Shown: positions 13,361 to 56,214, counted from the first letter of the stretch. The stretch is DNA of 64,000 bases from Paraphysomonas bandaiensis (GCA_965644295.1 CBFFRP010000080.1:248001-312000), one strand, 5' to 3'. The notes: generated from the sequence alone by a model not told the origin. Numbers and translations are program-made.

Positions 13361-14210
13361 ATGTACGCGAGAGCAGCGACGCAAAGTGATGTGTATGATT
13401 TACTGGAACTTGAGAGGTGTTGTTGGGCAACACACCTTCAAGCCACTGAACAAACCATTCGAAACAGGATAACTCGCAACCCTTATGGCCAGTTCGTTGT
13501 TGTAATTAATGATACACTATGCGGTGCTCTGTATACACAAACCATTTTGAGTTCTAAAGAATTAGTTTCCGGAAAATTTGAGAACCAAGAAGATCTCCAC
13601 AACGAGAGAGGAACCACACTTCAACTGCTTGCTATTGCGGTGCAGAGTGTCAGCACAGGAAATCCTGCGGCGTTTTTACGTGATTATGCTCTTCAAGTAG
13701 CCAGAGATGATGCCAAAATCACAACTGTTGTTGCTATGACACGGTGCAGTGCGTACGCACAACAGAGTACAGGTGACTACAACAGATATGTGTTAAGCTG
13801 TAAGGATCCAACTATATTTTTCCATGTTTCTGGTGGTGCTACGATTGAGCAAATTGTTGAGAACTACCGTCCTGAAGATCGTGCTAATCTGGGCAGTGCA
13901 ATTTTGATACGTTATTCTTTGGATGCTTGCGTCAATGCGCCCACCTCTGGGGCATTTCCCGAGAAGTCTGAGGAATTTAGTGCTCCAATAGCGAGCACTC
14001 TTCTTGAAGATATCTGCAAGAAGCTTATCGAAATAAATCCACAGTGTGCATTTGTTAATGATCTTGGCGGAACTCCACTGATGACTGTAATCGACTCGCT
14101 CCAAGTTCTTGTTCTACACAGTTGGTTGGAGACAAGGTTGAGCCGTGACCTCTCACCAACATTTCTCTTTAATTATACCACACCGAAGAGCATTATTAAC
14201 GGCATATATG
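13361..14210 (+). other. PKS loading module: GNAT-like domain + ACP0
   Basis: VVAMTRC, DPTIFFHVSGGA and NYRPEDRANLGSAILIRY match CurA/SxtA-type GNAT-like initiation domains (conserved Thr and His). ACP: IDSL...LSPTFLFNYTTP. Confidence 0.88.
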
Positions 14211-17200
14211 GATCACCAGTTGCATCTGAAATATCGTACCAATCTTCTTCTGAGCCATTGGCAATTATTGGTACCTCATGCAAATTTCCTGGTGAAATAA
14301 ACTCTCTGCATGATATGTGGCGGAATATTGTCTCGAAAGCATGTGCCTCATCTGAAGTCCCATTTGATCGGTGGGACTTAAACGCTTTAGATTTAGAGAA
14401 ACATGGACTCGATCCCAGCCGTCAAAGTTGTGTAAATTTGGGATCTTTTTTGTCCTCAGTCGCACAATTCGATCCTACTTTTTTCGGTATGGGCCAAAGC
14501 GAGGCAGAAAACGTGGATCCACATCAGAGACTTGTTTTAGAAATGGCTGTTCGTGCACTTGCGGATAGTAATATGTCACGAGATAAGTTAGAAGGGCAGT
14601 GTGTGGGAGTATGGGTTGGTATGTCGGGTACTGATGTTAATTCGTTGCCTGGTTGTGGACTGAATGAAAATCACACCGTCTACTCTGCAACTGGATCGTC
14701 TGTTGCTGTGACAGCTGGGAGATTGTCATATCTCTTGGGATTACGTGGACCGGCCATGGTGGTTGATACGGCATGTTCCTCTTCACTAGTTGCACTAAAT
14801 CAGGCTTGTGAGGCTCTCCGAACGGGGAAGTGTAATGCTGCTGTCGTCTCTGCTGTAAATCTCATTTTGACACCATGGACATCTGTTGCGTATGCACGGG
14901 CAGGAATGACATCGCCGGATGGCAAGTGCCACACCTTTGATGAATCCGCCAACGGATACTGCAGAGCTGAAGGATGTGGTGCCTTAGTGTTGAAACGATT
15001 GAGTGATGCAGAACGAGATAATGATGGTATTTATGCAGTTGTTCGAGGGTCGGCAGTGATGCAGGACGGTAAGAGTGCTAGTTTGACAGCCCCCAATGGT
15101 CTTGCCCAGGAGCAGCTTCTTCGTGCGGCATTATCAGATGCTGGAGTGGATGCTGGTGATGTATCTCTTATTGAGGCTCATGGGACTGGGACGAAATTAG
15201 GTGATCCTATTGAGACGGAGGCTTTATCGTCGGTATATGGTCATGGGCGGAGTGAAGAGAATACATTGTATGTTTCGAGTGTAAAAGCGAATATCGGTCA
15301 TATGGAGGCAGCAGCTGGTATAGGAGGTATATTGTCAGCGATATTGGCACTTCATTATAAGCAAGCTCCTCCAAATGCCCAGCTGCGTGAGCTGAATTCG
15401 AAGGTGGCAGCATCTGTGTCAGGCAGTCCAATTTCGTTTCCCACGGAACCTACACCCTTGGTTCGACATGGGGATCGTCCTTTGTTAGCTGGAGTGAGTT
15501 CATTTGGTTATAGCGGCACAATATCTCATGTGATATTGGAAGAAGCTCCCCTCTCTCACTCCCGCTCGCCTGGTGTACTTTCTAGTAGCAAATCCTCCTC
15601 CACTGTATTGTCGGAAACATGTATAGCGGGTATGGTGTGGCAGTTTGCTGGACAGGGGACACTCAGTGTTGGCGCATTGCGCGATATGTATGAGTCGGAG
15701 TCCACATTTCGTGACGCTTTGAGTCGGTGTGATGATATTCTTCGATCTCATCTGGGTGTAGGTGCATCTGAGTTATTGTATCCTGGGATCTGTGGTAGTT
15801 TGACTGAGATTAGTGCAGCGGAGCACCTTTCGGAGACTGTGTACTCTCAGCCTATACTGGTGGCTCTTGAGTATTGTCTGAGTCAGGTATGGTTGTCACG
15901 GGGTATTCGCCCAGCTGCAGTGATGGGTCACAGTCTAGGAGAGTATGCAGCTGCTATTGTCAGCGGAGTTTTGTCATTGGAGGATAGTTTGCGACTGGTG
16001 TGTATACGTGGTCGCTTGATGCAGGAGAGTGATGGATGTGTGGGTTGCATGTATGCCGTCCGAGCAACAGCTGATGAGGTAATCAGTGCAATCTCTGATT
16101 CAGGTTTGACGAACGAAGTGTCTGTGGCTGCAGTGAATGGACTTCGTAGTGTAGTAGTATCCGGGTCTGTGGATGGAGTTCAGAAAGTGTTGAACAGCAC
16201 TGGTTTGATGAATATAAGCCATCGTCAGTTGAATGTATCGAGGGCATTTCACTCTCCGTTGATGGCAGATATTATTTCTGCTTATGAGAAGGAGCTGCTA
16301 TTAGTACAGTTTAATCATCCGACGGTTAAGTTTGTGTCTACTGTGACGGGACATTATGCGGATGAGGAGTTAATATCATCGTCATATTGGTTGAAGCATA
16401 TATTGCAGCCAGTGTTGTATGAGTCAGCAGTGGAGGTATGTTATAGTGGAGAGAGTCGTGATGGCACCTGTGTGTTTGTTGAGATGGGAGCGAATTCTAC
16501 ATTGAGCCGTTTAGTTCGAGTTAATCGTTTTAACATTGAATGTCTTAATGGGTTTGATATAATTGATATTTCAGCGAAGTACTGTTGGGGTTACCGACCT
16601 CGATATGTTCGTTATAAGCATCCGAATCACCGCGTTTTCCATGATAGCACTATATCTTTACGTGATAAAAGTATATGCTTCTACGGAAATATAACTGGTT
16701 TTCATATTAAAGAGGGTGCTAAATGTTTCCGGAGTTCTGGTGTTTTAGAAGCTGTAACCAGTGCCTTTATTTTGAACACTTTTTCGAAGTTGAACTCTGA
16801 TAATGTCTTCGTATCTTTAATTAATGTAAAGTTTACGCAGCATCGATTTCAGAAAGAGCGCGTTAGCACGGTTGTCTGCGAACTGAATACTTCATCTGAG
16901 TTTTTGCTCTATGCGGCGACTGATAACGATATGTACGAGATTTCAAGTGGCAGTGTTGGACTTAAGAAGCAGTTTGCTACACTCCCGTGTACGAGAGATC
17001 GTAATGGCCTTGACCTTAGCTTTCTCTCCCCATTGGAATTGCGAAGTTTTTCTGATGCTTTTGTCACGCTGAGTACGTTTGAATTTAACGAGGTTTCATT
17101 CCAGAGCACTTTTCGTAATGTTGCAGTTTCCGAAGAGCCAGGCTTCTCGCTTCATCCTGTTATATTCGAAGCAGCATTTCGAAGTTGCACAGCCCATATG

Positions 17201-20200
17201 ACAAAACTTAATATGCACGACGTATGGATATCATACTGTGAGGAAGTTGTGATCAATGGGAATCGCGATTTCCTTCCACTACAATGTAGTAAGTTTTATT
17301 GTCATGGAGTTGTCAAGTCAAGAACTTTGACTAGTGTTGTATATGATATCTTTGTGTGGAATTCACATGGAGATTTTCTCACAACTTTGAGAGGTTTAAC
17401 TGTAGTTCGTAGTGCCACAATTTCAGATCTGTTGTACCTGAACAGTTCCCTCGTTGAGTGTAAGTTTTTGCCTTTATCAAATGACTTAATTGGTATTAGT
17501 ACTCTTGGAATTTTTGGTTTTGAGGGCTTGAGTGTTGGCGTGAAAGAAATTTTAGAAACGGTATATTCGAGCGTGCATATTGAAATGCATGAATTAAGTG
17601 ATATTACGAACAAAACAGCATTGGATAGCTGTGATGCTTGTGTGATTCTACTCGACAAACTGTCCTGTGGAGATATTCGTCATTGTTTAAATATTTTGGA
17701 GGCCGCTTATATGACGTCTTCACCGCGGTTTCTATTTCTTACAGTCAACGCATTATGCAAAGAAATTGAGCCTTTTTCCTCTTTTTATGCTACATTTGCT
17801 GGTGCTGCTCGATGCGCACAATTGGAAAATCGTGAGGCCAAAATATCTGTTGTAGATATGTACTGTACTGGGCAAATTGTCGAAAGTGCAAGCAAAGTCA
17901 TTATAAACGAGCTGCCACTTCTTGGCTCCGAAATGGAGGTAGCATATTGCAACGATTTGCGTAATGTTAGGAGATATGCGCCACTCGATATATCAACTAC
18001 AGGATATATACGCCTATCATGCAGCGAGGATGTCGATCAAGGTACATATATTATTACAGGTGGGTTAGGTGGACTTGGACTATTGACTGCAAGGGTATTA
18101 GCTAGTCATGGTGCGTCTAGATTAGTACTTTTATCTCGATCTGGCAAGGTATCATATACCGGCCAGGGTCTGGAGTTGGAATTGGAGTGGCTTCGGGAGT
18201 CTTCTGGCAGTGAGGTTCATGTGATGTGTTGCGACGTATCTGACGAGTCTTCTGTAGTGGATATGTTGCGAGAGGTTCGTGAGATGGGTGGGGGTATTCG
18301 GGGAATCATTCATGCAGCAGGAGTACTTCGTGATGCGTTGATTCGTGGGGGTGGTGCGGCATCTGGTTGTGCTGATGTGTGGGCATCTAAGGCGCACAGT
18401 GCGTGGTTATTACACAAGCACACGTTGGAGGATTCCCTTTCAACATTTGTTGTATATTCGTCAATCGTATCCGCTATCGGAAATATTGGTCAATCTGCTT
18501 ATGGTGCCGCAAATAGTTATTTGGATGGACTTGTAGAGTATCGTGTTCGTAACGGTTTACCTGGTGTTAGTATTCGGTGGCCGGCGGTTACTGGAGTTGG
18601 TATGGCGGCAGCAACGGGTGTTGATGGCGTAGGTATTACAATTGGGTCATCATCCGTTGAGAATGTATTGAAATGTTTGGTGCTAAGTAATCGTGCCGTT
18701 GAGGGTGTTATCACTATAGCTCCCCATGGTATGAAGGATTGGATGTCTGACAGTATTAAACAACAGTTTTCAAATGTTAGATTGCTTCAACCAGTGCAGA
18801 CTAATACATCTATGGCCGTAACTGGGTCGTCAACTAGGCCCCGAATAAGATCTATTGTCTGTGAGCGGTCTATTGAGGATGTGGTGTATACCGTTCGTAG
18901 TATAGTAGAATCGTTACTAGAAGTCTCCGGCGTCTCCGAAACTGACCAAGTGATGGACATGGGACTGGATTCTCTAGCTGTCACTGAGTTAGCCAGTAAG
19001 TTAGCATCTGAGTTTGGGGTTCGTGTTCTTCCGACGTTGGTGTTTAATTATCCTACACTACGGGATATAACAGGACATATTATAGATCTCCTGGGACTGT
19101 CAGAGTCCATCACAACCACGGAATCACCTGGGTGTCTGCCTCCATATGAGGGAAGGGGAAACAGTGACATGGCCATCATTGGTGTAAGTTGTCGCCTTCC
19201 TGGTGATATTAATGATCTTGAGTCCATGTGGAGCATGTTATGTGGGCGCTGCGACATGACAAGCGAAGTATCACCGTATCGCTGGGACACAGATGGATTG
19301 ATGGCACGTAGTTCACTGGCGGATCCAAGTATATTAAACCGTGTTCGATATGGTGGTTTCTTGTCTGATGAAGTTTTGGAAAGCTTTGATGCATCGTTGT
19401 TTGGAATTTCTGACGCAGAGGCCATGCATATGGATCCTCGTCATAGATTGTTATTGGAAAGCAGTTACGAGGCTCTGGTGGATGCAGGGTATAATGTTTC
19501 TGAGCTGAAAGGAAAGAAAGTTGGGGTTTTCGTCGGGATATCTGGCTTACCAGATAATGACACATCTGATCATCGAAAATCTTTCTCTGTCTATGATGCT
19601 ACTGGAAAGGCGTTGTCCGTAGCAAGTGGAAGAATATCTTATGCATTTGGATTGCAAGGTCCTTGCTGGACCGTAGATACAGCTTGTTCGTCATCAATTG
19701 TGGCTATTCACTCTGCTAGAAGAAGTCTTCAGTTGAAGGAATGTGAGGTGGCAATTGTAGGAACCGCAACGGCACTGACATCTGAATTGAGTATTGCATG
19801 TGCTATGGCTGGCATGACATCGCCTGATGGCAAGTGCTACACCTTTGACGAGTCAGCCAACGGATACTGCAGAGCGGAAGGATGTGGTACCTTAGTGTTG
19901 AAACGATTGAGTGATGCAGAACGAGATAATGATGGTATTTATGCAGTTGTACGAGGGTCGGCAGTGATGCAGGACGGTAAGAGTGCTAGTTTGACAGCCC
20001 CCAATGGTCTTGCCCAGGAGCAGCTTCTTCGTGCGGCATTATCAGATGCCGGTGTGGATGCTGGTGATGTATCTCTTATTGAGGCTCATGGGACTGGGAC
20101 GAAACTAGGTGATCCTATTGAGACGGAGGCTTTATCGTCGGTATATGGTCATGGACGAAGTGAAGAGAATACATTGTATGTTTCTGGTGTAAAAGCGAAT

Positions 20201-23200
20201 ATCGGTCACATGGAGGCAGCAGCTGGTATAGGAGGTATATTGTCAGCGATATTGGCACTTCATTATAAGCAAGCTCCTCCAAATGCCCAGCTGCGTGAGC
20301 TGAACTCGAAGGTGGCAGCATCTGTGTCAGGCAGTCCAATTTCGTTTCCCACGGAACCTACTCCATTGGTTCGACATGGGGATCGTCCTTTGTTAGCTGG
20401 AGTGAGTTCATTTGGTTATAGCGGCACAATATCTCATGTGATATTGGAAGAAGCTCCCATCTCTCACTCCCGCTCGCCTGGTGTACTTTCTAGTAGCAAA
20501 TCCTCCTCCACTGTATTGTCGGAAACATGTATAGCGGGTATGGTGTGGCAATTTGCTGGACAGGGGACACTCAGTGTTGGCGCATTGCGCGATATGTATG
20601 AGTCGGAGTCCACATTTCGTGACGCTTTGAGTCGGTGTGATGATATTCTTCGATCTCATCTGGGTGTAGGTGCATCTGAGTTATTGTATCCTGGGATCTG
20701 TGGTAGTTTGACTGAGATTAGTGCAGCGGAGCACCTTTCGGAGACTGTGTACTCTCAGCCTATACTGGTGGCTCTTGAGTATTGTCTGAGTCAGGTATGG
20801 TTGTCACGGGGTATTCGCCCAGCTGCAGTGATGGGTCACAGTCTAGGAGAGTATGCAGCTGCTATTGTCAGCGGAGTTTTGTCATTGGAGGATAGTTTGC
20901 GACTGGTGTGTATACGTGGTCGCTTGATGCAGGAGAGTGATGGATGTGTGGGTTGCATGTATGCCGTCCGAGCAACAGCTGATGAGGTAATCAGTGCAAT
21001 CTCTGATTCAGGTTTGACGAACGAAGTGTCTGTGGCTGCAGTGAATGGACCTCGTAGTGTGGTAATATCCGGGTCTGTGGATGGAGTTCAGAAAGTGTTG
21101 AACAGCACTGGTTTGATGAATATGAGTCATCGTCAGTTGAATGTATCGAGGGCATTTCACTCTCCGTTGATGGCAGATATTATTTCTGCTTATGAGAAGG
21201 AGCTGCTATTAGTACAGTTTAATCATCCGACGGTTAAGTTTGTGTCTACTGTGACGGGACATTATGCGGATGAGGAGTTAATATCATCGTCATATTGGTT
21301 GAAGCATATATTGCAGCCAGTGTTGTATGAGTCAGCAGTGGAGGTATGTTATAGTGGAGAGAGTCGTGATGGCACCTGTGTGTTTGTTGAGATGGGAGCG
21401 GATTCTACATTGAGCCGTATTGGAGCATCTGCTATTCGTAAAGTTTTGGTGGATACATCTTGTTGTAGTTGGTTACACGGTATGAGTGTTGAGAACTTTT
21501 CAGCTTCTGGATTTAACAAGTTGTTTTCTCATAAACGGTTCCGGCTGAGGAAATTTTATCATCGTTTACTTGATTGTGCTGTTACTAGTTTGTTATCCAG
21601 TGCGACGGAGATGCACACTATCCTACACGGTGGGATCATAAATGAATGGTTAGGTCAACATGTGGTCCGTGGAGACATTGTGCTACCGGGTGCAGCAATG
21701 ATAGATATGGGCCTTGCTGTGGCATTGAGACAGCGTGTTGTTCATCAGAGCACTTATTCTGACGTGGTACTTCACTTGGAAGCGTTCAGTGTCACTCGAC
21801 CTCTCATTGTAGTTGACAGCAGTGCGTCTTCTACGTCCCCAACTGAGATGTGGTGTGTACATAGGGATGATAATAATATTCAGTGGCAAAGTTGTTTGGA
21901 TGGAAATAATGTAGAATTGAATGCTCAGTGTTCTGTAAATACTGTAAAAAATGGGGTACCAGTGGAGTGGCATGAATTAGAGAAGAAACTGATTGCACTA
22001 CGTGAAATTTGCAACCACGAACTCAACGTTTCTCAGCTGTACGCACGATTTGTTGACAGTGGTTTGTGTTATGGGCCTAAGTTTCAACTAGTAACGTCCT
22101 TGCATTGTGATACTGATGGGAAGAATGTTATCTCTCGATTGTCAATCGGGGATGTCAGTATGACTAGTTTATATTTGTTGCCGCCTCCATTTTTGGATGC
22201 CGTGCTACAGTCTGCTGTGGCAGCTAATATGTTTAGAGGTATCGAAGAGATGCAAGTACCATATGCCATCGACAATGTATGGTTGCGATGTGATGGATTA
22301 GCATCTCTGTGGGCAGCCGAGTGGTGTGAGGTCCATGTCGAGGCTCGCAGCATCACATCTGAGATGTCGATATTCGACCTGTATTTGTTTAGTGGGTCTG
22401 GTGAAGCTGTTTTAGTTGTAAATGGGTTGCGATGTGTTAGTTTTTCCGGAGGCTTGATGGATTCATGCAATTTGTTCTTGCATCGGTGGACTCCCTCAGT
22501 TTCTCCTTGCATTGATGGGGTTGCATTACATCATGTGTTGATTCTTGGTGACCCCGCTATGGGGAATATGTTGGGTCATGCACTGAATGAATATACCACT
22601 GTTGGTGCGATTGACATGGCTGCAAAAGATAATGTGAAGAACTATGACTTGGTTATTTTACAAGCTGGTGGTGATGCTGAACATGGCGATAGTGGTAGGA
22701 TGGTTACAAAACTTTTAGCCGAACTGGAATGGCTATGTACTCGCACATCTCGTGTTTTAATTTTATCTTATTCAAATGCATCAAGTACCCAAATTAATGC
22801 ATTTAGAAACACTGCTTGCACTTTGTCCGGTATAGTGAAATGTCTTCAATTGGAATGCCCTTTTCTGAAAATGTCTGTTGTAAACGTTGAACCTTATGTT
22901 GCGCTCTCTCAATCCAGTGAATCTGTCCACGAAAATGATACATCATTGTCTTATGCGCAAAGGGTGTTCTCTGCTTTGCAGAATGAGATATCTATAATGG
23001 ACGATGAGATGGAAGTTAAGTATCGTGATGGTGTGCGTATGATGAAGCGCTACGAGCCACTAGATTTACCTGCTATCAATACTGGTGACAATCGCAATGT
23101 GGAGGGAGGTACATTCATCATAACCGGTGGGTTAGGTGGACTTGGACTATTGACTGCAAGGGTATTAGCTAGTCATGGTGCGTCTAGATTAGTACTTTTA

Positions 23201-26200
23201 TCTCGATCTGGCAAGGTATCATATACCGGCCAGGGTCTGGAGTTGGAATTGGAGTGGCTTCGGGAGTCTTCTGGCAGTGAGGTTCATGTGATGTGTTGCG
23301 ACGTATCTGACGAGTCTTCTGTAGTGGATATGTTGCGAGAGGTTCGTGAGATGGGTGGGGGTATTCGGGGAATCATTCATGCAGCAGGAGTACTTCGTGA
23401 TGCGTTGATTCGTGGGGGTGGTGCGGCATCTGGTTGTGCTGATGTGTGGGCATCTAAGGCGCACAGTGCGTGGTTATTACACAAGCACACGTTGGAGGAT
23501 TCCCTTTCAACATTTGTTGTATATTCGTCAATCGTATCCGCTATCGGAAATATTGGTCAATCTGCTTATGGTGCCGCAAATAGTTATTTGGATGGACTTG
23601 TAGAGTATCGTGTTCGTAACGGTTTACCTGGTGTTAGTATTCGGTGGCCGGCGGTTACTGGAGTTGGTATGGCGGCAGCAACGGGTGTTGATGGCGTAGG
23701 TATTACAATTGGGTCATCATCCGTTGAGAATGTATTGAAATGTTTGGTGCTAAGTAATCGTGCCGTTGAGGGTGTTATCACTATAGCTCCCCATGGTATG
23801 AAGGATTGGATGTCTGACAGTATTAAACAACAGTTTTCAAATGTTAGATTGCTTCAACCAGTGCAGACTAATACATCTATGGCCGTAACTGGGTCGTCAA
23901 CTAGGCCCCGAATAAGATCTATTGTCTGTGAGCGGTCTATTGAGGATGTGGTGTATACCGTTCGTAGTATAGTAGAATCGTTACTAGAAGTCTCCGGCGT
24001 CTCCGAAACTGACCAAGTGATGGACATGGGACTGGATTCTCTAGCTGTCACTGAGTTAGCCAGTAAGTTAGCATCTGAGTTTGGGGTTCGTGTTCTTCCG
24101 ACGTTGGTGTTTAATTATCCTACACTACGGGATATAACAGGACATATTATAGATCTCCTGGGACTGTCAGAGTCCATCACAACCACGGAATCACCTGGGT
24201 GTCTGCCTCCATATGAGGGAAGGGGAAACAGTGACATGGCCATCATTGGTGTAAGTTGTCGCCTTCCTGGTGATATTAATGATCTTGAGTCCATGTGGAG
24301 CATGTTATGTGGGCGCTGCGACATGACAAGCGAAGTATCACCGTATCGCTGGGACACAGATGGATTGATGGCACGTAGTTCACTGGCGGATCCAAGTATA
24401 TTAAACCGTGTTCGATATGGTGGTTTCTTGTCTGATGAAGTTTTGGAAAGCTTTGATGCATCGTTGTTTGGAATTTCTGACGCAGAGGCCATGCATATGG
24501 ATCCTCGTCATAGATTGTTATTGGAAAGCAGTTACGAGGCTCTGGTGGATGCAGGGTATAATGTTTCTGAGCTGAAGGGAAAGAAAGTTGGGGTTTTCGT
24601 CGGCTTAACAGGTTTACCAGATAATGACTCATCTGATCATCGAAAATCTTTCTCTGTCTATGATGCTACTGGAAAGGCGTTGTCCGTAGCAAGTGGAAGA
24701 ATATCTTATGCATTTGGATTGCAAGGTCCTTGCTGGACCGTAGATACAGCTTGTTCGTCATCAATTGTGGCTATTCACTCTGCTAAAAGTAGTATGTATC
24801 GAAATGAATGCGATATTGCAGTCGTTTGTTCTTCATCTGTCATTCCATTGGACAGTAGTGTTGCATGTGCTGTGGCTGGCATGACATCGCCTGATGGCAA
24901 GTGCCACACCTTTGACGAGTCAGCCAACGGGTACTGTAGAGCTGAGGGATGTGGTGCCTTAGTGTTGAAGCGATTGAGTGATGCAGAACGAGATAATGAT
25001 GGTATTTATGCAGTTGTACGAGGGTCGGCAGTGATGCAGGACGGTAAGAGTGCTAGTTTGACAGCCCCCAATGGTCTTGCCCAGGAGCAGCTTCTTCGTG
25101 CGGCATTATCAGATGCCGGAGTGGATGCTGGTGATGTATCTCTTATTGAGGCTCACGGGACTGGGACGAAATTAGGTGATCCTATTGAGACGGAGGCTTT
25201 ATCGTCGGTATATGGTCATGGGCGAAGTGAAGAGAATACATTGTATGTTTCTGGTGTAAAAGCGAATATCGGTCACATGGAGGCAGCAGCTGGTATAGGA
25301 GGTATATTGTCAGCGATATTGGCACTTCATTATAAGCAAGCTCCTCCAAATGCCCAGCTGCGTGAGCTGAATTCGAAGGTGGCAGCATCTGTGTCAGGCA
25401 GTCCGATTTCGTTTCCCACGGAACCTACTCCATTGGTTCGACATGGGGATCGTCCTTTGTTAGCTGGAGTGAGTTCATTTGGTTACAGCGGCACAATATC
25501 TCATGTGATATTGGAAGAAGCTCCCATCTCTCACTCCCGCTCGCCTGGTGTACTTTCTAGTAGCAAATCCTCCTCCACTGTATTGTCGGAAACATGTATA
25601 GCGGGTATGGTGTGGCAATTTGCTGGACAGGGGACACTCAGTGTTGGCGCATTGCGCGATATGTATGAGTCGGAATCTACGTTTCGTGACGCTTTGAGTC
25701 GGTGTGATGATATTCTTCGATCTCATCTGGGTGTAGGTGCATCTGAGTTATTGTATCCTGGGATCTGTGGTAGTTTGACTGAGATTAGTGCAGCGGAGCA
25801 CCTTTCGGAGACTGTGTACTCTCAGCCTATACTGGTGGCTCTTGAGTATTGTCTGAGTCAGGTGTGGTTGTCACGGGGTATTCGCCCAGCTGCAGTGATG
25901 GGTCACAGTCTAGGAGAGTATGCAGCTGCTATTGTCAGCGGAGTTTTGTCATTGGAGGATAGTTTGCGACTGGTGTGTATACGTGGTCGCTTGATGCAGG
26001 AGAGTGATGGATGTGTGGGTTGCATGTATGCCGTCCGAGCAACAGCTGATGAGGTAATCAGTGCAATCTCTGATTCAGGTTTGACGAACGAAGTGTCTGT
26101 GGCTGCAGTGAATGGACCTCGTAGTGTGGTAATATCCGGGTCTGTGGATGGAGTTCAGAAAGTGTTGAACAGCACTGGTTTGATGAATATGAGTCATCGT

Positions 26201-41200: not shown

Positions 41201-44200
41201 GAAGAAGTTGATGTGGCTACTATTTATGATCGCCCTGATTGCGTACAACTTGGACAATCCTTTCGTCTACTTCACAGTGTTCATGTTTCTGACTGCAAGT
41301 CCCGCGCTTTTGCAGTCATCAATGTTCCTGACAAACTAATGTGGTCAACATATCTGCTTCCACCCCCATTTATTGAGGCTATGTTTTTAGCGTCTACCTG
41401 TATACTTCCTAACTGTGTTGGTGTTGTCAGTATTGTTGATAAATGGTGGGTGAGTTGCGAGAATATACATAAGTTGTGGGCCCACGGCACTTGTTTCCTG
41501 TATATTACCTGTTCTCGTTTAGCTGATAATGATACTGTGATCAATTTTTGTCTTTTCTGTGGTAACGATATATCACTTGTATCTGCTGAATATGTAGTTT
41601 CCATGCGCCGTGATGTCGACTTAATTGTCACCGAGAAAAGGGATCATGTGTCTGTCCCATCACATCTTTACAAGAAAAATGCTACTTCTGTGACATCTAG
41701 AATATATGATATAGTTAAGAGTATGGTAGACTGCAGCGATTTTGATCGTGACGCACACTTAATGGATTTGGGATTGGACTCCCTCAGCGTTACTGAGCTA
41801 GCAACCCAGTTGTCGAATGAATTTAAATTGAAACTTTCCCCTACGTTGGTATTTAGCTATCCAACTATTGATGATATCACTGGCCACATTCTTGAATTGC
41901 TTGGTGTTTCCGACGTAAAGGAAGAGCCAGAACGTGGACTGACCAGGACATCGAACTCTCGATTTGACAGTGGCGATATGGCTATAGTTGGTGTAAGTTG
42001 TCGATTACCTGGCGATGTGAATGATTTGAATTCAATGTGGGAAATGCTCAGTGGAGGTCGTGATGCGACAAGCGTGGTGTCTCCATCTCGCTGGGATGTG
42101 GATGCATTAATTGCACGCAGTGATTTGATGGATCCGAGTGTGTTGGATCGTGTTCGTCACGGCGGTTTTTTGTCAGATGATGTTTTGGAGGGTTTTGATG
42201 CACCTTTATTTGGAATTTCTGATGCAGAAGCCTCCCATATGGACCCTACCCACCGTTTGTTATTACAATGTGCCTACGAGGCCTTATGTGATGCAGGGTA
42301 CGATATGTCGACAATGAAAGGTCAGAAGATTGGGGTATTTGTGGGGATTTCTGGTGTGGTTTCTTCCGATTTGAAATATGATTCGGCATCTCCTGTTCTC
42401 TTTAATAATTCTCTGTCGTCCGTTTACAGTGCTACGTCATCTGCTCTGTCTGTCGCGTCTGGTCGAATATCGTATACATTAGGGTTGAATGGTCCAAACA
42501 TGTCCTTTGATACTGCCTGCTCCTCATCATTGGTAGCACTGCACTGTGCTAAACGAAGTGTTCAGTTTGATGAATGTTGCACTGCTGTTGTTTTAGGAGT
42601 GAATTGTTTGTCTGAAGCAGCGTCAGCAGCATGTGCTATGGCTGGCATGACATCGCCTGATGGCAAGTGCCACACCTTTGACGAGTCAGCCAACGGGTAC
42701 TGTAGAGCTGAGGGATGTGGTGCCTTAGTGTTGAAGCGATTGAGTGATGCAGAACGAGATAATGATGGTATTTATGCAGTTGTACGAGGGTCAGCAGTGA
42801 TGCAGGACGGTAAGAGTGCTAGTTTGACAGCCCCCAATGGTCTTGCCCAGGAGCAGCTTCTTCGTGCGGCATTATCAGATGCCGGTGTGGATGCTGGTGA
42901 TGTATCTCTTATTGAGGCTCATGGGACTGGGACGAAACTAGGTGATCCTATTGAGACGGAGGCTTTATCGTCGGTATATGGTCATGGGCGAAGTGAAGAG
43001 AATACATTGTATGTTTCTGGTGTAAAAGCGAATATCGGTCACATGGAGGCAGCAGCTGGTATAGGAGGTATATTGTCAGCGATATTGGCACTTCATTATA
43101 AGCAAGCTCCTCCAAATGCCCAGCTGCGTGAGCTGAACTCGAAGGTGGCAGCATCTGTGTCAGGCAGTCCAATTTCGTTTCCCACGGAACCTACTCCATT
43201 GGTTCGACATGGGGATCGTCCTTTGTTAGCTGGAGTGAGTTCATTTGGCTTCAGTGGCACAATATCTCATGTGATATTGGAGGAAAGAGTGTGTCGTGGT
43301 CATAATTTACTCTTACGGCACAGTAAATTACCTTCTAGAGGAAATACAATGAAGCGTTATAATATTCCACGATCTGTTCGAAGTTGCTTTCAGGATGCTG
43401 CATATGAGGGGTATAGCCAAAGTGTGATATTTACGATAAGTGTTGATTGCTTAGCTCTTCGTCATTTAATGTCTGATTATGAACTTGGGTCAGAAATGGT
43501 ATTACCGATGGCAGTAATTTTCGAGATATTTAGTTCCGCTGCGAGTAGGTTGGGCGGTTTTGGCAATTATGCAAGAGGACTATCTACAAGCACCCATCTT
43601 AGTGACATTAGGGTGTTATGCCCAGTTGTTGTTGAATGGTCAGATATTCAAGGAGAAAAAATTCGCAATATCACCACACTGTGGTGCGTATGTGATAAAG
43701 ACGGTGGGTTGAGTATATACAGTGACGATGGTGGATCAAGAGTGCTACATGCGCAATGCTCGATTTGGAATAGGCAGTCGTCGAGTCAGTACAGCACGGC
43801 TTTCCCTGAAATACACTCAGCCGGCTTGCGTAATATCGATACTGCTACGGTGTACAAAAAGCACACAGAAAATGGGTTTCGGCTTGGAAGAACATACAAA
43901 CTGTTGGAGAGTATACAGGTCTCCAATTGTAGGTCCCGCGCTTTTGCAGTCATCAATGTTCCTGACAAACTAATGTGGTCAACATATCTGCTTCCACCCC
44001 CATTTATTGAGGCTATGTTTTTAGCGTCATCTGTTTTGTTCTCTGAATTTGATGGGTCAACAGGAGAAAGTATGGGCGACATGAAAGTACCTGGCGAAGT
44101 TGATAAGCTGTGGGTTATATCTGACAATATTGGTAGTTTATGGAATCAAAACTTTTGCGAGGTGTATATGGAACGTCAAAGTAATCGAAATGGTGTAGTT

Positions 44201-47200
44201 GTAAACTTCACTGTATTAAATAAAGAAGGGTCAGCTATATTGTGTGCTGAAGGCGTTGTTATGAGAAATATGGCAGAATTTAGTGGTGGTGCTCCAGACA
44301 ACACTTCCACAGCCATATTACAGAGCCAGTGGAAATTTTCTGGACCAGTTAATACTACGCCTTGCTCTATACCATCATGTTTGTTTGTTGGACCAGGTGA
44401 GACATGTACAGCAATTATAGATGTTCTAAATAGCAGCAATTTCACAATGGATATCGCTGACCATGTTAGCATCGGGCCCAATAACGTTTCTCTTATTATT
44501 CAAAACGACAAGAAGTACAATATGGCTGTTGTTGTTGTTGAAGGCATCGTTGCTTGTGATTCTATCGCAACGTCATACGACCCCATGAATGCTCTTCATT
44601 TAAAGGCTTGGCTTGAAGCTATTGAAATTTTGTGCGGAAGAACGAAGAATTTGATAGTTTTGTCTACGGTAGGAAATGAAGGCGATAACGTTTTGTACAA
44701 CACGCTAATTGGTGCAGTACGATGCGCTCAGTTAGAATATCCAGCAGTGCATATAGTGGTTATTGATATCGATTCATCGATTTCTGATGTGGAAGGCATG
44801 TGTGCTGCTTTGCAGAATGAGATATCTATAATGGATGGTGAGATGGAAGTTAAGTATCGTGATGGTGTGCGTATGGTGAAGCGCTACGAGCCATTAGATT
44901 TACCTGTTACCAATACTGGTGACAATCGCAATGTGGAGGGAGGTACATTCATCATAACCGGTGGGTTAGGTGGACTTGGACTATTGACTGCAAGGGTATT
45001 AGCTAGTCATGGTGCGTCTAGATTAGTACTTTTATCTCGATCTGGCAAGGTATCATATACCGGCCAGGGTCTGGAGTTGGAATTGGAGTGGCTTCGGGAA
45101 TCTTCTGGCAGTGAGGTTCATGTGATGTGTTGCGACGTATCTGACGAGTCTTCTGTAGTGGATATGTTGCGAGAGGTTCGTGAGATGGGTGGGGGTATTC
45201 GGGGAATCATTCATGCAGCAGGAGTACTTCGTGATGCGTTGATTCGTGGGGGTGGTGCGGCATCTGGTTGTGCTGATGTGTGGGCATCTAAGGCGCACAG
45301 TGCGTGGTTATTACACAAGCACACGTTGGAGGATACGCTTACAACATTTGTTGTATATTCATCGATTGCATCTGCTTTTGGTACTGTTGGGCAGGCCTCG
45401 TATTCGATGGCCAATGGATATCTGGATGATTTAATTTGTTTTCGAAGGCGTCATGGAATGTGTGGTGTTAGTATTCGGTGGCCGCCTGTGTCCTCTGTTG
45501 GTATGGCTGTACACGTTGGTGTGGCAACGGATGAAGCAAGTATTGATGCCGAGTATTTGCAAACGTTTGTTAGGAAGGTTCTTGATTCGAATTGTTCTCT
45601 TTCTGTTGTGACCTTATTGCCACATGGTCTTTTAGACTGGGTTGGGGAAGATCTGCGTACTCAACTTGAAGGAGTCAGCCAACCACAAGTGGTTACTAAG
45701 AAATCAGCAGCTCGAAACCCGAGCTCCAACCAAGGTATTACGAAAGAAGATGTTTTGAAAAAAGTGAGAAGCATTGTAATACAATTGGTGGAAAATTCTG
45801 ACGCCACCGACAGCAGCCAGCTCATGGACTACGGTTTAGATTCACTTGGAGTGACTGAACTTTCAACTCAATTAGCCAGTCAATTTCAAATTAAATTGCC
45901 TCCAACCTTGGTATTTAGCTATCCAACTATTGATGATATCACTGGCCACATTCTTGAATTGCTTGGTGTTTCCGACGTAAAGGAAGAGCCAGAACGTGGA
46001 CTGACCAGGACATCGAACTCTCGATTTGACAGTGGCGATATGGCTATAGTTGGTGTAAGTTGTCGATTACCTGGCGATGTGAATGATTTGAATTCAATGT
46101 GGGAAATGCTCAGTGGAGGTCGTGATGCGACAAGCGTGGTGTCTCCATCTCGCTGGGATGTGGATGCATTAATTGCACGCAGTGATTTGATGGATCCGAG
46201 TGTGTTGGATCGTGTTCGTCACGGCGGTTTTTTGTCAGATGATGTTTTGGAGGGTTTTGATGCACCTTTATTTGGAATTTCTGATGCAGAAGCCTCCCAT
46301 ATGGACCCTACCCACCGTTTGTTATTACAATGTGCCTACGAGGCCTTATGTGATGCAGGGTACGATATGTCGACAATGAAAGGTCAGAAGATTGGGGTAT
46401 TTGTGGGGGTATCTGGTTCTGTGTTCCGAGATAGCAATGGAAGTACATCCTGTGCGGTACACTCAAAACCCTCAGTGTATGATGCCACAGGATCGACTCT
46501 ATCTGTCGCAGCTGGTCGAATATCATATGTTTTGGCCTTGCAAGGTCCATGTGTTGCATTCGACACCGCTTGCTCATCTTCTCTAGTAGCATTGCACTAT
46601 GCCAAGCGAAGTATGCAGCACAGAGAGTGCGATGTGGTAATAGTTATGGGAGTCAATTTCTTGACAAAGCATTCGTCTCTGGCGTGTGCTATGGCTGGCA
46701 TGACATCGCCTGATGGCAAGTGCCACACCTTTGACGAGTCAGCCAACGGGTACTGTAGAGCTGAAGGATGTGGTGCCTTAGTGTTGAAGCGATTGAGTGA
46801 TGCTGAACGAGATAATGATGGTATTTATGCAGTTGTACGAGGGTCAGCAGTGATGCAGGACGGTAAGAGTGCTAGTTTGACAGCCCCCAATGGTCTTGCC
46901 CAGGAGCAGCTTCTTCGTGCGGCATTATCAGATGCTGGAGTGGATGCTGGTGATGTATCTCTTATTGAGGCTCACGGGACTGGGACGAAACTAGGTGATC
47001 CTATTGAGACGGAGGCTTTATCGTCGGTATATGGTCATGGGCGAAGTGAAGAGAATACATTGTATGTTTCTGGTGTAAAAGCGAATATCGGTCACATGGA
47101 GGCAGCAGCTGGTATAGGAGGTATATTGTCAGCGATATTGGCACTTCATTATAAGCAAGCTCCTCCGAATGCCCAGCTGCGTGAGCTGAACTCGAAGGTG

Positions 47201-50200
47201 GCAGCATCTGTGTCAGGCAGTCCAATTTCGTTTCCCACGGAACCTACTCCATTGGTTCGACATGGGGATCGTCCTTTGTTAGCTGGAGTGAGTTCATTTG
47301 GTTACAGCGGCACAATATCTCATGTGATATTGGAAGAAGCTCCCATCTCTCACTCCCGCTCGCCTGGTGTACTTTCTAGTAGCAAATCCTCCTCCACTGT
47401 ATTGTCGGAAACATGTATAGCGGGTATGGTGTGGCAATTTGCTGGACAGGGGACACTCAGTGTTGGCGCATTGCGCGATATGTATGAGTCGGAATCTACG
47501 TTTCGTGACGCTTTGAGTCGGTGTGATGATATTCTTCGATCTCATCTGGGTGTAGGTGCATCTGAGTTATTGTATCCTGGGATCTGTGGTAGTTTGACTG
47601 AGATTAGTGCAGCGGAGCACCTTTCGGAGACTGTGTACTCTCAGCCTATACTAGTGGCTCTTGAGTATTGTCTGAGTCAGGTGTGGTTGTCACGGGGTAT
47701 TCGCCCAGCTGCAGTGATGGGTCACAGTCTAGGAGAGTATGCAGCTGCTATTGTCAGCGGAGTTTTGTCATTGGAGGATAGTTTGCGACTGGTGTGTATA
47801 CGTGGTCGCTTGATGCAGGAGAGTGATGGATGTGTGGGTTGCATGTATGCCGTCCGAGCAACAGCTGATGAGGTAATCAGTGCAATCTCTGATTCAGGTT
47901 TGACGAACGAAGTGTCTGTGGCTGCAGTGAATGGACCTCGTAGTGTGGTAATATCCGGGTCTGTGGATGGAGTTCAGAAAGTGTTGAACAGCACTGGTTT
48001 GATGAATATGAGTCATCGTCAGTTGAATGTATCGAGGGCATTTCACTCTCCGTTGATGGCAGATATTATTTCTGCTTATGAGAAGGAGCTGTTATTAGTA
48101 CAGTTTAATCATCCGACGGTTAAGTTTGTGTCTACTGTGACAGGACATTATGCGGATGAGGAGTTAATATCATCGTCATATTGGTTGAAGCATATATTGC
48201 AGCCAGTGTTGTATGAGTCAGCAGTGGAGGTATGTTATAGTGGAGAGAGTCGTGATGGCACCTGTGTGTTTGTTGAGATGGGAGCGGATTCTACATTGAG
48301 CCGAATGGGTCAAAATATCTCTCGAAGTTCTAAAGTCCAGTGGAAATCTGGGAATGAGCCTTTTGGTTGTACTTCTGAAGAGAGTTTGATGACTGCATTC
48401 AATGTTTGTAAGAAGTCGAAGATGTATTGCAGTTATGAACGAAGCCATGCGCTCTTACAAGATACCAAAATTGATCCAATATCTGGGGATATTGTATATA
48501 CCATAGCATTACATGAGGGTATACTTTCGAGTTGGCTATCGGATCACGTATTGCATGATGCTATTGTTTTGCCTGGAGCTGCCATTGTTGAAATAATGAG
48601 TTCTGCCCTGATGTTTTGCAGCGACAACAAGCATACTGATGTCATTTCCCTAGAAGGAGTCACTGTGGTGCGCCCTGTGGTTGTGAGTAACACTAGAGAC
48701 GCTACTGGAAGGCTAAACGCAACCACACTTTGGTGTGTATGTAGCAAAGAGAATGGAATCGTCAGCATGAATTTATTCAGTATGGAAAGTGGCACTCGAG
48801 TGCTGCATGCACGGGGAACTGCTGAAACAGCAGGAAAAGGTCAACCTTTACCGCTTCAGAAGGTGCTGTTGGCGTTTGATACTTTAAAGTCGCAGTGCTC
48901 TGTTGAAATTGATGTTAACCGTGCCTACAACAATATTTCGAAGGAAGGTTTGAAATTCGGACCGAGCTTCAAAATTTTACAAAGAGCACATATTTCCAAA
49001 GACATGTCGAGTGCAATTGCTGTGTTAAATATATCGAATATATCTCTTTCTAACTACCTGCTTCCACCACCAATTATTGACGCCATGCTGCAAACAGGAT
49101 TTACTTTGTCCGTTGTTGGCAGTCATGATGAAAACAGCGAGGACACGGCACGTATTCCGTATTCTTTCGATCATGTGTGGATACTGCATGATGTTATCAA
49201 GGAAACGCGTGGTACTAGTACTTGTTTTGCCTATGTTCAAACAGTCAAAACTGATAGAAGTACAAGTATATGTAATTATGCCCTTGTTAACGAGAACGGG
49301 CACGTAATGCTGTATGCCGAAGGCGTTTATTGTAGACGTTCGAACTCCAATATTCAGCAAGGAAACGAAACGAGTTCAGTGCTACAGTATAAGTGGACTA
49401 AATCACCTGATATTTTATTGGATACGGTGGTTGATTTGGGAGGTGAAAAAAAGCTACTGCTAGTGGGAAGTGAAAGAATTTTTTCCGTATTGATGGAAAA
49501 GGAGTGGTGGAGTGGCCATGACAACACTTTCGTGGAATTATCTTCCCTCTTGCAAGAGCCTGGGAGTATTGGTAGTGCTTCATATGACAAGATATTTGTT
49601 GTAGGCGATGAGTGTTGGCCTGATACCGAATATTTCTGTCAAACTCCTATGTCTGATTGGATAAAAGTCATTGAGGTGTTGTATGGGAAAGCAGAAACAA
49701 TTTTCTTTATTTTCTCGAATACTTCAGCAGCATACAGCTCTATTCTAGGCTCAATTCGATGCGCCCAGTTGGAATATTCCGGAACGAGATCTTCTTTCAT
49801 TGTAACTGATCCATCCATACCTTATGAGCGGAGCTTGTGCTCTGCTTTGCAGAATGAGATATCTATAATGGATGGTGAGATGGAAGTTAAGTATCGTGAT
49901 GGAGTGCGTATGGTGAAGCGCTACGAGCCATTAGATTTACCTGTTACCAATACTGGTGACAATCGTAATGTGGAGGGAGGTACATTCATCATAACCGGTG
50001 GGTTAGGTGGACTTGGACTATTGACTGCAAGGGTATTAGCTAGTCATGGTGCGTCTAGATTAGTACTTTTATCTCGATCTGGCAAGGTATCATATACCGG
50101 CCAGGGTCTGGAGTTGGAATTGGAGTGGCTTCGGGAATCTTCTGGCAGTGAGGTTCATGTGATGTGTTGCGACGTATCTGACGAGTCTTCTGTAGTGGAT

Positions 50201-55050: not shown

Positions 55051-56214
55051 CTACACAACAGGGCATGAGAGTTGTGGGGAGAATGCTTCCCACTTGAGGT
55101 TCTCCTTCTTAACGCCGGCTGTAATCAATCCGTGTGCCATCCCCCCCATGAAAGATGTCGGACCACATAGATAAAACATACAGTCGGCTCCTACTTCATT
55201 AACCAAAGCGTTAGCGATGTCATTGACAACAGGACGGCCTAATTTTTCTGTAAAATAATACTGATTATTTCCGGTATTTACTTTTTCAAAGTGGTCGTAG
55301 AATGGTACCGCAGCTTGGTTTTTGTCAACATGAATAGTTTTAACATGGGTAGTTCCAGCATTCGTGAGAGCATCAATGAAAGACTTCATTATTGTCCTAC
55401 CAATTCCGGCACTGACAAGAACAGGCTTCATTTCATTTGAAACCAATGTGAAAGGACCAAATGGAGGAGACAGTTGAACTATGCCCCCAACAGCAAGTAC
55501 ATCGTGTAGATATGTACTAACAACACCTCCATCTATCTTTTTAAGGCTGACTTCGAAGAAATTATCTCCTGGTTTAGACGTGACCGTGTAGTGTCTAGGG
55601 CTAGTATACGTGCCGTCACCGTTTAAGTCCACACGAATGCTCAAGTACTGTCCCGGTGTGAACTCGAAGGGCCCACTAGAACCGTCAGCAGGAACAAACC
55701 GGAAGGTCTTGACACCAGTAGACAAATCCTTGATGCTGTTAACAGTGAAGTTCTACCAACCTCTCCAGCCACCGGAGCGGGCTGCCGCCGCCTCATAGCG
55801 GCCTTCTTCATTGTCAATGAGCAACTTGGCCAAGAAATTGACGGCCTCAGACCACGCCGCTCCGATCTCTGGAGTCACAGCAGGCTTGAGAACTTCAGCA
55901 ACAGCAATAAGTAAGTTGTCGTGGACGATGGGATAGTGCTCTGGTAGGACCTGTAGACCACAGTGCTTGCTTGCAATCAGTTCTACTGCATCACCAAGAG
56001 CCCCTAAGTTATCAATATTCAAGGCATATGCAATGATTGCATTTGCGAGGGCCTTGGACTGTCTCCCTGCAGATTGGTTGGCTACATTAAAAAACTGAGA
56101 TGCCTCAGGATTATTACGAAACATAGTCTCATAAAACACCCTCGTGATCTCCTCGGCATGCTCCGCTACCAGTGGTGCAGTGGCCTTGACAATATCAATA
56201 GTGGACTGGTTCAT
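55051..56214 (-). pseudogene. hmp: Flavohemoglobin (NO dioxygenase) with a single in-frame TAG at 55753-55755
   Basis: Globin: FYETMFRNNPE, IASKHCGLQVLPEHYPIV. Then GGWRGW*NFTV in the same frame, followed by FAD/NAD domains (PGQYLSI, RHYTVTS, GVVSTYLH, PPFGPF, YLCGP). 388 codons, no introns. Confidence 0.88.

What the first reader, a model, noticed from the sequence alone, without database searches (positions are those of the whole stretch)
15540..48310. Hybrid cis-AT / AT-less architecture, with the AT behaving like an inserted cassette
Seen: modules 4 and 7 have no AT; the other six share an almost identical one. Only ~30 aa of Ser-rich linker separate KS (HVILEE) from AT (WQFAGQG), with no recognizable KS-AT linker domain. 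The post-AT sequence of modules 2/3 (LFSHKRFRLRKFYHRLL) aligns with the post-KS sequence of AT-less module 4 (MFQMKRYRLPRFYHPLL). Both AT-less KSs end SSFGFSG, whereas all six AT-bearing KSs end SSFGYSG. Inference: a KS-tail+AT cassette was copied into trans-AT-style modules (or cleanly lost twice), a snapshot of a trans/cis-AT transition. Modules 4 and 7 need a neighbouring or free-standing AT.
Basis: partly seen in the sequence, partly recalled or inferred. Interest (0 to 1): 0.8.

Follow-up and report, generated by a model that had tools for sequence, protein, structure and literature searches.

The report
Chrysophyte polyketide synthase with missing acyltransferases
A 12,601-residue polyketide assembly line of a marine chrysophyte flagellate really lacks the loading enzyme (acyltransferase) in two of its eight modules, but this mixed layout and its very short KS-AT junction look like an old, stable design of chrysophyte-type synthases, kept while the modules constantly overwrite each other, and not a transition caught in the act.

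Summary
One intron-free ORF (13361-51166, +) encodes a loading region and eight KS modules. Six modules carry a linker+AT block that is 98.5-99.7% identical at DNA level. Modules 4 and 7 go from the KS end to the DH start in 27-33 residues, with no AT or linker-domain remnant. The roughly 100-residue KS-AT linker domain of canonical cis-AT and trans-AT synthases is absent everywhere.

The AT is one of several blocks homogenised by gene conversion (also the KS C-half, the KR and parts of DH and ACP). KS and AT are both closest to a cyanobacterial cis-AT module (CurL). KS4 and KS7 are not trans-AT-like. The same linker-less mix of AT-bearing, AT-less and decayed-AT modules occurs in the neighbouring gene, in other chrysophytes (Spumella, Epipyxis) and in a metagenomic relative.

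The hybrid layout is therefore a long-lived design, most likely reached by AT loss. The three AT-less junctions in this genome share a private DNA haplotype. ACP4 and ACP7 must be loaded in trans. An adjacent embedded AT or the genome's FabD-like enzyme are the candidates; neither was tested.

Mixed protist and fungal synthases are already published. The scan noted KS homogenisation in the neighbouring gene earlier. Read-level checks were not possible.

The parts
13361..51166 (+). PKS-C: single 12,601-codon ORF. Layout: GNAT-like/ACP loading region, then M1 KS-AT-x-KR-ACP; M2 and M3 KS-AT-DH-KR-ACP; M4 KS-DH*-KR-ACP; M5 KS-AT-DH*-KR-ACP; M6 KS-AT-DH stump-ACP; M7 KS-DH*-KR-ACP; M8 KS-AT-DH-KR-ACP (DH* lacks the catalytic His).
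15551..16492 (+). M1 short linker (29 aa) plus AT block
20459..21400 (+). M2 short linker plus AT block. In the AF2 model the linker is disordered and KS and AT are confident.
25526..26467 (+). M3 short linker plus AT block
34610..35551 (+). M5 short linker plus AT block. Candidate in-trans loader of ACP4 (inference).
39659..40600 (+). M6 short linker plus AT block
47345..48286 (+). M8 short linker plus AT block. Candidate in-trans loader of ACP7 (inference).
29285..30592 (+). KS4 (AT-less module). The catalytic Cys and both His are present. The C-half is 94.6-96% identical at nt level to the other KSs.
30551..30559 (+). AT-less haplotype in the KS4 tail (TTC AGT, Phe in SSFGFSG). It is shared with KS7 and with PKS-A module 3.
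30593..30673 (+). M4 AT-less junction. 27 aa run from the KS end to the DH 'HPLL' start and contain the K-R-Y-R-L motif that follows the AT in other modules.
41984..43291 (+). KS7 (AT-less module). Catalytic residues are present.
43250..43258 (+). AT-less haplotype in the KS7 tail (TTC AGT)
43292..43390 (+). M7 AT-less junction. About 33 aa, containing K-R-Y-N-I, leading straight into a DH-like domain.
33044..33214 (+). ACP4, which has no AT in its own module
45761..45952 (+). ACP7, which has no AT in its own module

Best explanation
PKS-C is a genuine eight-module assembly line of a chrysophyte-type clade of type I PKSs. This clade descends from CurL-like cis-AT modules and has lost the roughly 100-residue KS-AT linker domain.

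In this clade the AT is a loop-out. It is held by two short, probably flexible tethers between the KS C-terminus and a basic-aromatic motif (K-R-[FY]-x-[LFI]) that precedes the DH 'H-x-L-L' start. A module therefore exists in one of two clean states. In one the AT is present. In the other the KS is joined to that motif by about 20-35 residues.

Both states, and decayed ATs, coexist in relatives, so the hybrid layout is old and stable. It was most likely produced by AT loss.

In this genome the three clustered PKS genes undergo intense concerted evolution (gene conversion or unequal exchange). This homogenises the KS C-half, the linker+AT, the KR and other blocks to 98-100% DNA identity. The AT-less junction survives as its own short 'allele', marked by a private TTC-AGT haplotype and present in M4, M7 and PKS-A module 3.

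Shown here: the anatomy, the homogenisation, the absence of the linker domain, the relatives and the shared haplotype.

Inferred: loss as the direction of change, and that ACP4 and ACP7 are malonylated in trans. The favoured loader is the embedded AT of the next module, whose KS they must visit anyway (AT5 and AT8). Otherwise the loader is another embedded AT or the FabD-like enzyme encoded elsewhere in the genome.
For: Architecture and junctions.

Mosaic of 97-100% nt-identical blocks with sharp drops to 30-60%. AT blocks 98.5-99.7% identical.

Linker domain missing: spacing of 26-39 aa against 100-130 aa; CurL and DEBS alignments; Pfam PF16197 matched only at profile positions 11-52 of 111 and below its cut-off; in the AF2 model residues 445-460 have pLDDT <50 between confident KS and AT; Foldseek TM is about 0.5 to KS-AT didomains.

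cis-AT ancestry: CurL is the best PDB hit for the whole KS-AT didomain and for the AT alone.

KS4 and KS7 are not trans-AT-like.

The same design occurs elsewhere: PKS-A module 3; Spumella vulgaris P0168 and Epipyxis P0002, the latter with a dead AT; metagenomic locus L028 with 3 AT-bearing and 2 AT-less KSs.

Shared AT-less haplotype.

PKS-A module 3 is flanked on both sides by blocks identical or nearly identical to those of its AT-bearing neighbours yet keeps the AT-less junction.

A FabD-type exon is present at C218. No AT is found in the window flanks or in the 60 kb upstream outside the PKS genes.

Precedents: a fungal LasC/LasD line with ATs in only 3 modules and no trans-AT (PMC13749307); the AT-displacement model for algal PKSs (PMC4661987).
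Against: No reads or transcripts could be examined. Assembly correctness across 5-kb repeats at 99% identity, and expression, are therefore unverified. Two small contigs (C595, C544) are redundant module-repeat units, which shows the assembler struggled here.

The direction of change (loss or gain) cannot be proven, because recombination has erased module histories. The KS-core tree needs many changes under either direction.

The AF2 inter-domain geometry is of low confidence (pTM 0.65), so 'flexible tether' is an inference.

Nothing here shows which AT loads ACP4 and ACP7, or that these modules elongate at all.
Confidence: 0.6

Rival explanations
1. One reading: the ancestral modules were AT-less (trans-AT style). 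A KS-tail+AT cassette is spreading into them by copying. M4 and M7 are the last unconverted modules, so this is a trans-to-cis transition in progress.
For: The homogenised tract in AT-bearing modules runs without a break from the KS C-half through the AT and stops within about 10 codons after the AT end, as expected for a copied block. With homologous flanks on both sides, one conversion event could install an AT. Absence of the linker domain would be easy to explain if an AT had been inserted into a linker-less AT-less module. Linker-less AT-less KS-DH junctions also exist in bacteria.
Against: The AT is of the cis-AT PKS lineage and its best match is the same CurL module that is the best PDB hit for the KS-AT didomain. 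KS4 and KS7 cores show no trans-AT affinity beyond that of AT-bearing KSs. Relatives at about 50% identity already have the same mix, and some ATs are decaying in place (Epipyxis dead AT; terminal AT stumps). That fits erosion and long-term coexistence better than a recent sweep. KS C-half, KR and DH blocks are homogenised just as strongly.
Confidence: 0.2
2. M4 and M7 do not elongate. Without malonyl loading they are skipped, or they act only as processing or transfer stations. Their intact KS residues are kept merely because gene conversion keeps overwriting the KS C-half.
For: Both catalytic His lie inside the homogenised block, so their presence is not independent evidence of selection. 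The DH domains of M4 and M7 lack the catalytic His.
Against: The active-site Cys lies in the non-homogenised KS core and is intact in both. Each module keeps a full KR and an ACP with its Ser. The 37.8-kb frame is open. The AT-less junction type is conserved across species. A functional eukaryotic line with AT-less elongating modules and no trans-AT is published (PMC13749307).
Confidence: 0.12
3. Assembly artefact: the AT was dropped from M4 and M7 when near-identical 5-kb repeats were collapsed.
For: The repeats are 5 kb long and up to 100% identical, and leftover repeat-unit contigs exist. Reads could not be checked.
Against: A collapse joins identical sequence. Here each junction has 80-100 nt of unique, in-frame DNA carrying the conserved post-AT motif, followed by a unique DH. 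The junction DNA is single-copy, with no AT-bearing alternative copy. A third junction of the same kind lies in another gene, and further ones occur in other organisms.
Confidence: 0.03

Closest known systems
Bacterial cis-AT modular PKS modules (CurL of curacin, DEBS)
   Same: They give the best sequence matches for the KS-AT didomain and for the AT alone. The domain order KS-AT-DH-KR-ACP, the catalytic motifs and a basic-aromatic motif after the AT before the DH 'HPLL' are the same.
   Different: The well-structured KS-AT linker subdomain of about 100 residues (PMC11907408) is missing; only 29 residues remain. Two of the eight modules have no AT.
trans-AT PKSs (bacillaene PksJ/L, the Brevibacillus bimodule 7zma)
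   Same: Modules 4 and 7 lack an AT and must be loaded in trans.
   Different: Only 2 of 8 modules are AT-less. No dedicated trans-AT gene lies in or near the cluster. trans-AT KSs keep the linker subdomain (PMC11907408), and these do not. The KS cores are not closer to trans-AT KSs than those of AT-bearing modules are.
Mixed cis-AT/AT-less eukaryotic PKSs already described: Karenia brevis contig 28414, the Gambierdiscus 7-module PKS (PMC5725682), EhuPKS9 (PMC4661987) and fungal LasC/LasD (PMC13749307)
   Same: One polypeptide or line mixes modules with and without an embedded AT. For LasC/LasD no trans-AT takes part, and extender supply from embedded ATs to other modules is proposed.
   Different: Here most modules keep the AT (6 of 8). 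The linker-less junction and the module homogenisation have not been described for those systems in the papers I could read.
[quoted passage not shown]
   Same: Domain blocks are near-identical between modules and genes, with sharp boundaries, so the modules are mosaics.
   Different: This is a eukaryotic nuclear gene. One conserved indel state (AT present or absent) persists inside the homogenised array.
AT-displacement model for algal multimodular PKSs (Shelest et al. 2015, PMC4661987)
   Same: The model predicts multimodular cis-AT lines that lose ATs. This gene and its relatives fit as partly AT-depleted lines.
   Different: The state here appears long-lived and not transitional. No displaced, dedicated AT gene was found, only a FabD-type gene.

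Membership tests
cis-AT modular type I PKS | KS, AT and ACP in every extension module | tested here: not met
   6 of 8 modules have an AT. M4 and M7 have none, even at Pfam E<=10.
cis-AT modular type I PKS | Structured KS-AT linker subdomain of about 100 residues | tested here: not met
   29-residue spacer against 100-130. About 90 residues of CurL and DEBS are unmatched. The spacer is disordered in the AF2 model.
cis-AT modular type I PKS | KS and AT sequences of the cis-AT lineage with catalytic residues intact | tested here: met
   CurL is the top hit for the KS-AT didomain and for the AT alone. Cys/His/His, GHSLG, the GQG oxyanion motif and the AFH His motif are present.
cis-AT modular type I PKS | Post-AT linker that returns to the KS | tested here: inconclusive
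   A conserved K-R-[FY]-x-[LFI] motif precedes the DH in modules with and without an AT. The AF2 confidence there is <50.
trans-AT PKS | Modules generally AT-less and served by a dedicated free-standing AT encoded with the cluster | tested here: not met
   Only 2 of 8 modules (and 1 of 9 in the neighbouring genes) are AT-less. The PF00698 scan of the whole assembly finds no AT in the flanks. The only free-standing candidate is a FabD-type exon on another contig.
trans-AT PKS | KS of the trans-AT clade with a retained linker (flanking) subdomain | tested here: not met
   The KS4 and KS7 cores behave like AT-bearing cores and nest among them. 27-33 residues separate KS from DH.
Mixed cis-AT/AT-less eukaryotic modular PKS | Embedded ATs in some but not all modules of one line | tested here: met
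   literature precedents PMC5725682 and PMC13749307
Concertedly evolving (gene-converted) modular PKS | Near-identical DNA blocks shared by paralogous modules, sharp mosaic boundaries, and identity higher within a gene than between genes | tested here: met

The most novel reading that the evidence does not exclude
Chrysophyte-type PKSs are a natural clade in which the supposedly universal KS-AT linker domain is dispensable. The AT hangs on two flexible tethers and can serve the ACP of the preceding AT-less module as well as its own. A line can therefore run stably with fewer ATs than modules and no dedicated trans-AT.
Probability: 0.3. Interest if true: 0.7.

Novelty: new variant of a known kind. 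Interest (0 to 1): 0.5.

Why it matters
Mixed cis-AT/AT-less lines and module homogenisation are known, so the headline 'hybrid' is not new. What seems undescribed is a whole eukaryotic clade of modular PKSs with no KS-AT linker domain, in which the AT is a cleanly removable loop-out and AT-bearing and AT-less modules coexist for a long time. If confirmed, it shows that the linker domain is not essential for KS-AT cooperation. It also offers natural, minimal splice points for AT exchange or removal in PKS engineering. Finally, it gives a testable case of embedded ATs serving neighbouring modules, the open question raised by the fungal LasC/LasD system.

Tried and rejected
I did not try to get around it.

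2. Mobile-element-like or microhomology boundaries of the AT block. No direct repeat of 8 nt or more flanks the block beyond one chance 8-mer.

3. KS4 and KS7 as trans-AT-type KSs. Their variable cores gave the trans-AT bimodule 7zma as top hit, but the AT-bearing controls M2, M5 and M8 gave the same, so this was rejected.

4. AT recruited from a free-standing AT or FabD. Rejected, because cis-AT PKS ATs score about twice as high.

5. F versus Y in the KS tail as a functional signature of lacking an AT. Rejected as a rule, because AT-less relatives in Spumella, in a protein deposited as a Planctomycetes MAG and in L028 carry Y. It is a linked haplotype marker in this genome. From general knowledge, that position corresponds to the gating Phe of FAS-type KSs and is not a KS-AT contact; this was not tested.

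6. Contig context of relative P0007. It is a stand-alone two-module gene among ordinary eukaryotic genes and gives no help in polarising AT gain or loss.

7. A second structure prediction (M4 KS-DH) was not run. The tool returns no contacts, and the 27-residue gap already excludes a hidden domain.

8. The word search found enough relatives.
Full report
**What is there.** The window is C80:248001-312000 of a 62.5-Mb, 669-contig eukaryotic assembly. Earlier notes of the scan describe the organism as a colourless marine chrysophyte. A single ORF, 13361-51166 (+), encodes 12,601 residues.

Motif scans and Pfam give:
- a GNAT-like/ACP loading region;
- M1: KS-AT-x-KR-ACP;
- M2 and M3: KS-AT-DH-KR-ACP;
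- M4: KS-DH*-KR-ACP;
- M5: KS-AT-DH*-KR-ACP;
- M6: KS-AT-DH stump-ACP;
- M7: KS-DH*-KR-ACP;
- M8: KS-AT-DH-KR-ACP.

DH* lacks the catalytic His. All KSs have Cys/His/His and all six ATs have GHSLG and the other catalytic motifs.

- The six linker+AT blocks (942 nt each) differ pairwise at 3-14 positions.
- In M4 and M7 the KS end is followed by 27 and about 33 residues and then by a DH-like domain.
- Pfam at E<=10 on the whole KS-to-KR interval of M4 and M7 finds only DH families.
- The interval has the same length as AT end to KR in M2, so no AT or linker-domain remnant can be hidden there.
- The post-KS motif of M4 matches the post-AT motif of M2/M3 at 10 of 17 positions.
- This stretch is the end of the post-AT linker plus the 'H-x-L-L' N-terminal motif of PKS dehydratases (general knowledge of DH motifs), which is why the two align.

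**No KS-AT linker domain.**
- HVILEE to WQFAGQG is 29 residues.
- Among 202 KSs in the 120 best database hits, KS end to AT start is 100-130 residues in the bacterial proteins. It is 26-35 residues only in four protist-type proteins.
- Alignment to CurL leaves CurL residues 488-581 unmatched, and DEBS behaves likewise.
- Pfam PF16197 matches only profile positions 11-52 of 111, below its cut-off. That is the KS tail, not the linker domain.
- An AlphaFold2 model of M2 KS-AT built on a 93-sequence alignment has confident KS (1-434) and AT (464-768). Residues 445-460 and the post-AT segment 773-811 have pLDDT below 50, and pTM is 0.65.
- Foldseek finds KS-AT didomains, but only at TM about 0.5 and rmsd about 15 A. 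The canonical rigid arrangement is therefore not reproduced.
- A review states that the roughly 100-residue linker subdomain is structurally conserved in cis-AT cores and also in trans-AT KSs (PMC11907408). Its absence is the unusual feature here.

**The AT is one of several homogenised blocks.** A codon alignment of the eight modules shows a mosaic:
- the KS N-terminus occurs in two versions, M2-4 and M5-8, each 100% identical internally;
- the KS core of about 120 codons is variable;
- the KS C-half is 95-100% identical in all eight modules;
- the linker+AT is about 99% identical in six modules;
- DH-C plus psi-KR is 100% identical in M4, M5 and M7;
- the catalytic KR is 99-100% identical in seven modules;
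- the ACP C-terminus and the interdomain linker are identical in M4-M7.

Between these blocks identity falls to 30-60%. Identity is higher within a gene than between the three clustered genes, at about 93-94% for KS-C/AT against PKS-A/B. This is concerted evolution by gene conversion or unequal exchange, as known for mycolactone and many bacterial PKSs (PMC2569948, PMC8256042).

**A third AT-less module and a shared haplotype.** The two PKS ORFs upstream on the minus strand (7,292 and 7,347 residues) have nine KSs. PKS-A module 3 is AT-less with the same kind of junction.
- All three AT-less KS tails read SSFGFSG. All 16 AT-bearing tails, including two redundant contigs, read SSFGYSG.
- At DNA level the three share TTC AGT against TAT/TAC AGC, so a synonymous change is shared as well.
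- Their 46-nt tails are 96% identical to each other and 89-91% identical to the others.
- Upstream of that site each AT-less KS carries the variants of its own gene.
- In PKS-A module 3, both the KS C-half before the junction and the DH after it match those of its AT-bearing neighbours.
- The AT-less junction is therefore a short, separately inherited 'allele' of common origin. It has resisted being overwritten, and it does not represent two or three independent deletions.

**Not trans-AT modules in disguise.**
- The variable cores of KS4 and KS7 hit a trans-AT bimodule first, but the cores of M2, M5 and M8 do the same.
- In a maximum-likelihood tree of KS cores the protist sequences form one clade (95/94). 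AT-less KSs are scattered among AT-bearing ones: nine changes are needed, which is no more clustered than shuffled labels.
- The AT alone matches cis-AT PKS ATs (CurL 186 bits) far better than a trans-AT (PksD 93) or FabD (80-93).

**The design is shared with relatives.**
- The closest database proteins are chrysophyte or unnamed eukaryotic metagenome sequences.
- Epipyxis sp. (P0002) has one linker-less KS-AT and one module whose AT has lost GQG and the GHSxG serine.
- Spumella vulgaris (P0168) has a direct KS-to-DH junction.
- Metagenomic locus L028, about 53% identical, holds three AT-bearing and two AT-less KSs, all linker-less.
- P0007 and P0015, like PKS-A, end in AT stumps.
- AT-less relatives outside this genome mostly carry Y, so F is a marker of this genome's junction allele and not a functional rule.
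- The mixed architecture is therefore old and stable. ATs eroding in place favour loss as the direction, in line with the AT-displacement model for algae (PMC4661987). Polarity is not proven.

**How it probably works (inferred).** Because there is no linker domain, the AT is an excursion between the KS C-terminus and the K-R-[FY]-x-[LFI] motif that precedes the DH. Removing it leaves a short linker and an otherwise normal module.

ACP4 and ACP7 need malonyl from elsewhere. A PF00698 scan of the whole assembly finds ATs only in PKS or FAS-like genes, plus one FabD-type exon on contig C218 (TIGR00128, 179 bits). No AT gene lies in the window flanks.

I favour loading by the embedded AT of the following module (AT5 for ACP4, AT8 for ACP7). 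ACP(n) must dock on KS(n+1) anyway, and every AT-less module here is followed by an AT-bearing one in the same polypeptide. A housekeeping FabD or ACP-to-ACP transfer, as proposed for the fungal LasC/LasD line that has ATs in three modules only and uses no trans-AT (PMC13749307), are alternatives. None of this was tested.

**Known or new.** Mixed cis-AT/AT-less polypeptides are published for dinoflagellates (PMC5725682), for a haptophyte candidate (PMC4661987) and for a fungus (PMC13749307). Module homogenisation is also known. I found no description of a linker-domain-less KS-AT clade, or of chrysophyte PKS architecture beyond KS counts (PMC5029157; searches). The library lacks most subscription journals, so this absence is weak evidence. 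I rate the finding a new variant of a known kind.

**Limits.**
- Contigs C595 and C544 are redundant module units, so the module number could be off.
- The junctions themselves are unique, in frame and single-copy.
- The neighbouring genes were noted earlier by the scan, including KS homogenisation. My analysis of this window agrees with that note.

Noticed in passing
G000:C80:188001-248000 (loci L013-L015, L021-L023), upstream of the window: Two more giant PKS ORFs lie on the minus strand (7,292 and 7,347 residues). PKS-A has five KSs, its module 3 is AT-less and it ends in a truncated AT. PKS-B has four near-identical AT-bearing modules.
   Followed up: partly
G000:C595 (L017, 5,052 nt) and C544 (L019, 4,248 nt): These small contigs are redundant single repeat units. 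C595 is 99.94% identical to M5 of the window, and C544 is 99.96% identical to a PKS-A module. Either they are unplaced copies or the module count in the assembly is uncertain.
   Followed up: partly
window 13361-51166: There is strong strand composition bias over the whole ORF (GC skew about +0.2, AT skew about -0.12) that stops at its ends. It recalls the nucleotide-skewed repeats (GRINS) linked to gene conversion in bacterial PKS genes, but here it covers the entire gene.
   Followed up: no
window 21659, 26726 and aligned positions in M4-M8: Only M2, M3 and (with Asp in place of Gly) M8 keep the DH catalytic His. M4, M5, M6 and M7 have Phe or Tyr there. M6 has only a DH stump and no KR, and M1 has an unrecognisable spacer in place of a DH.
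   Followed up: partly
window AT blocks, e.g. 20459-21400: The AT specificity motif reads R-A-F-H instead of the usual H-A-F-H of malonyl-specific ATs. Relatives have N, H, R or C at that first position.
   Followed up: no
G000:C619:6089-16825 (-) (L018, L025): A 3,579-residue open frame encodes a PKS-NRPS hybrid (KS-AT-ACP-C-TE-A...). Its KS-AT spacer is also only about 33 residues although the KS tail is of the ordinary type. The linker-less junction is therefore not confined to the PKS-A/B/C family.
   Followed up: partly
G000:C288:467725-481683 (L001, L002, L016): Two inverted copies of a 1,868-residue FAS-like open frame (KS-AT-ER-KR-ACP, plus a possible DH seen only by motif scan) lie about 10 kb apart.
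   Followed up: no
window 55051-56214 (-): Adjacent globin and FAD-binding ORFs are probably exons of one flavohaemoglobin-like gene downstream of the PKS.
   Followed up: no
P0205 (NCBI NDG63455.1, labelled Planctomycetes MAG): This KS-DH-KR-ACP fragment on a 4.2-kb contig has the chrysophyte-type KS tail and AT-less junction. It is probably a eukaryotic contig mis-binned into a bacterial MAG.
   Followed up: no
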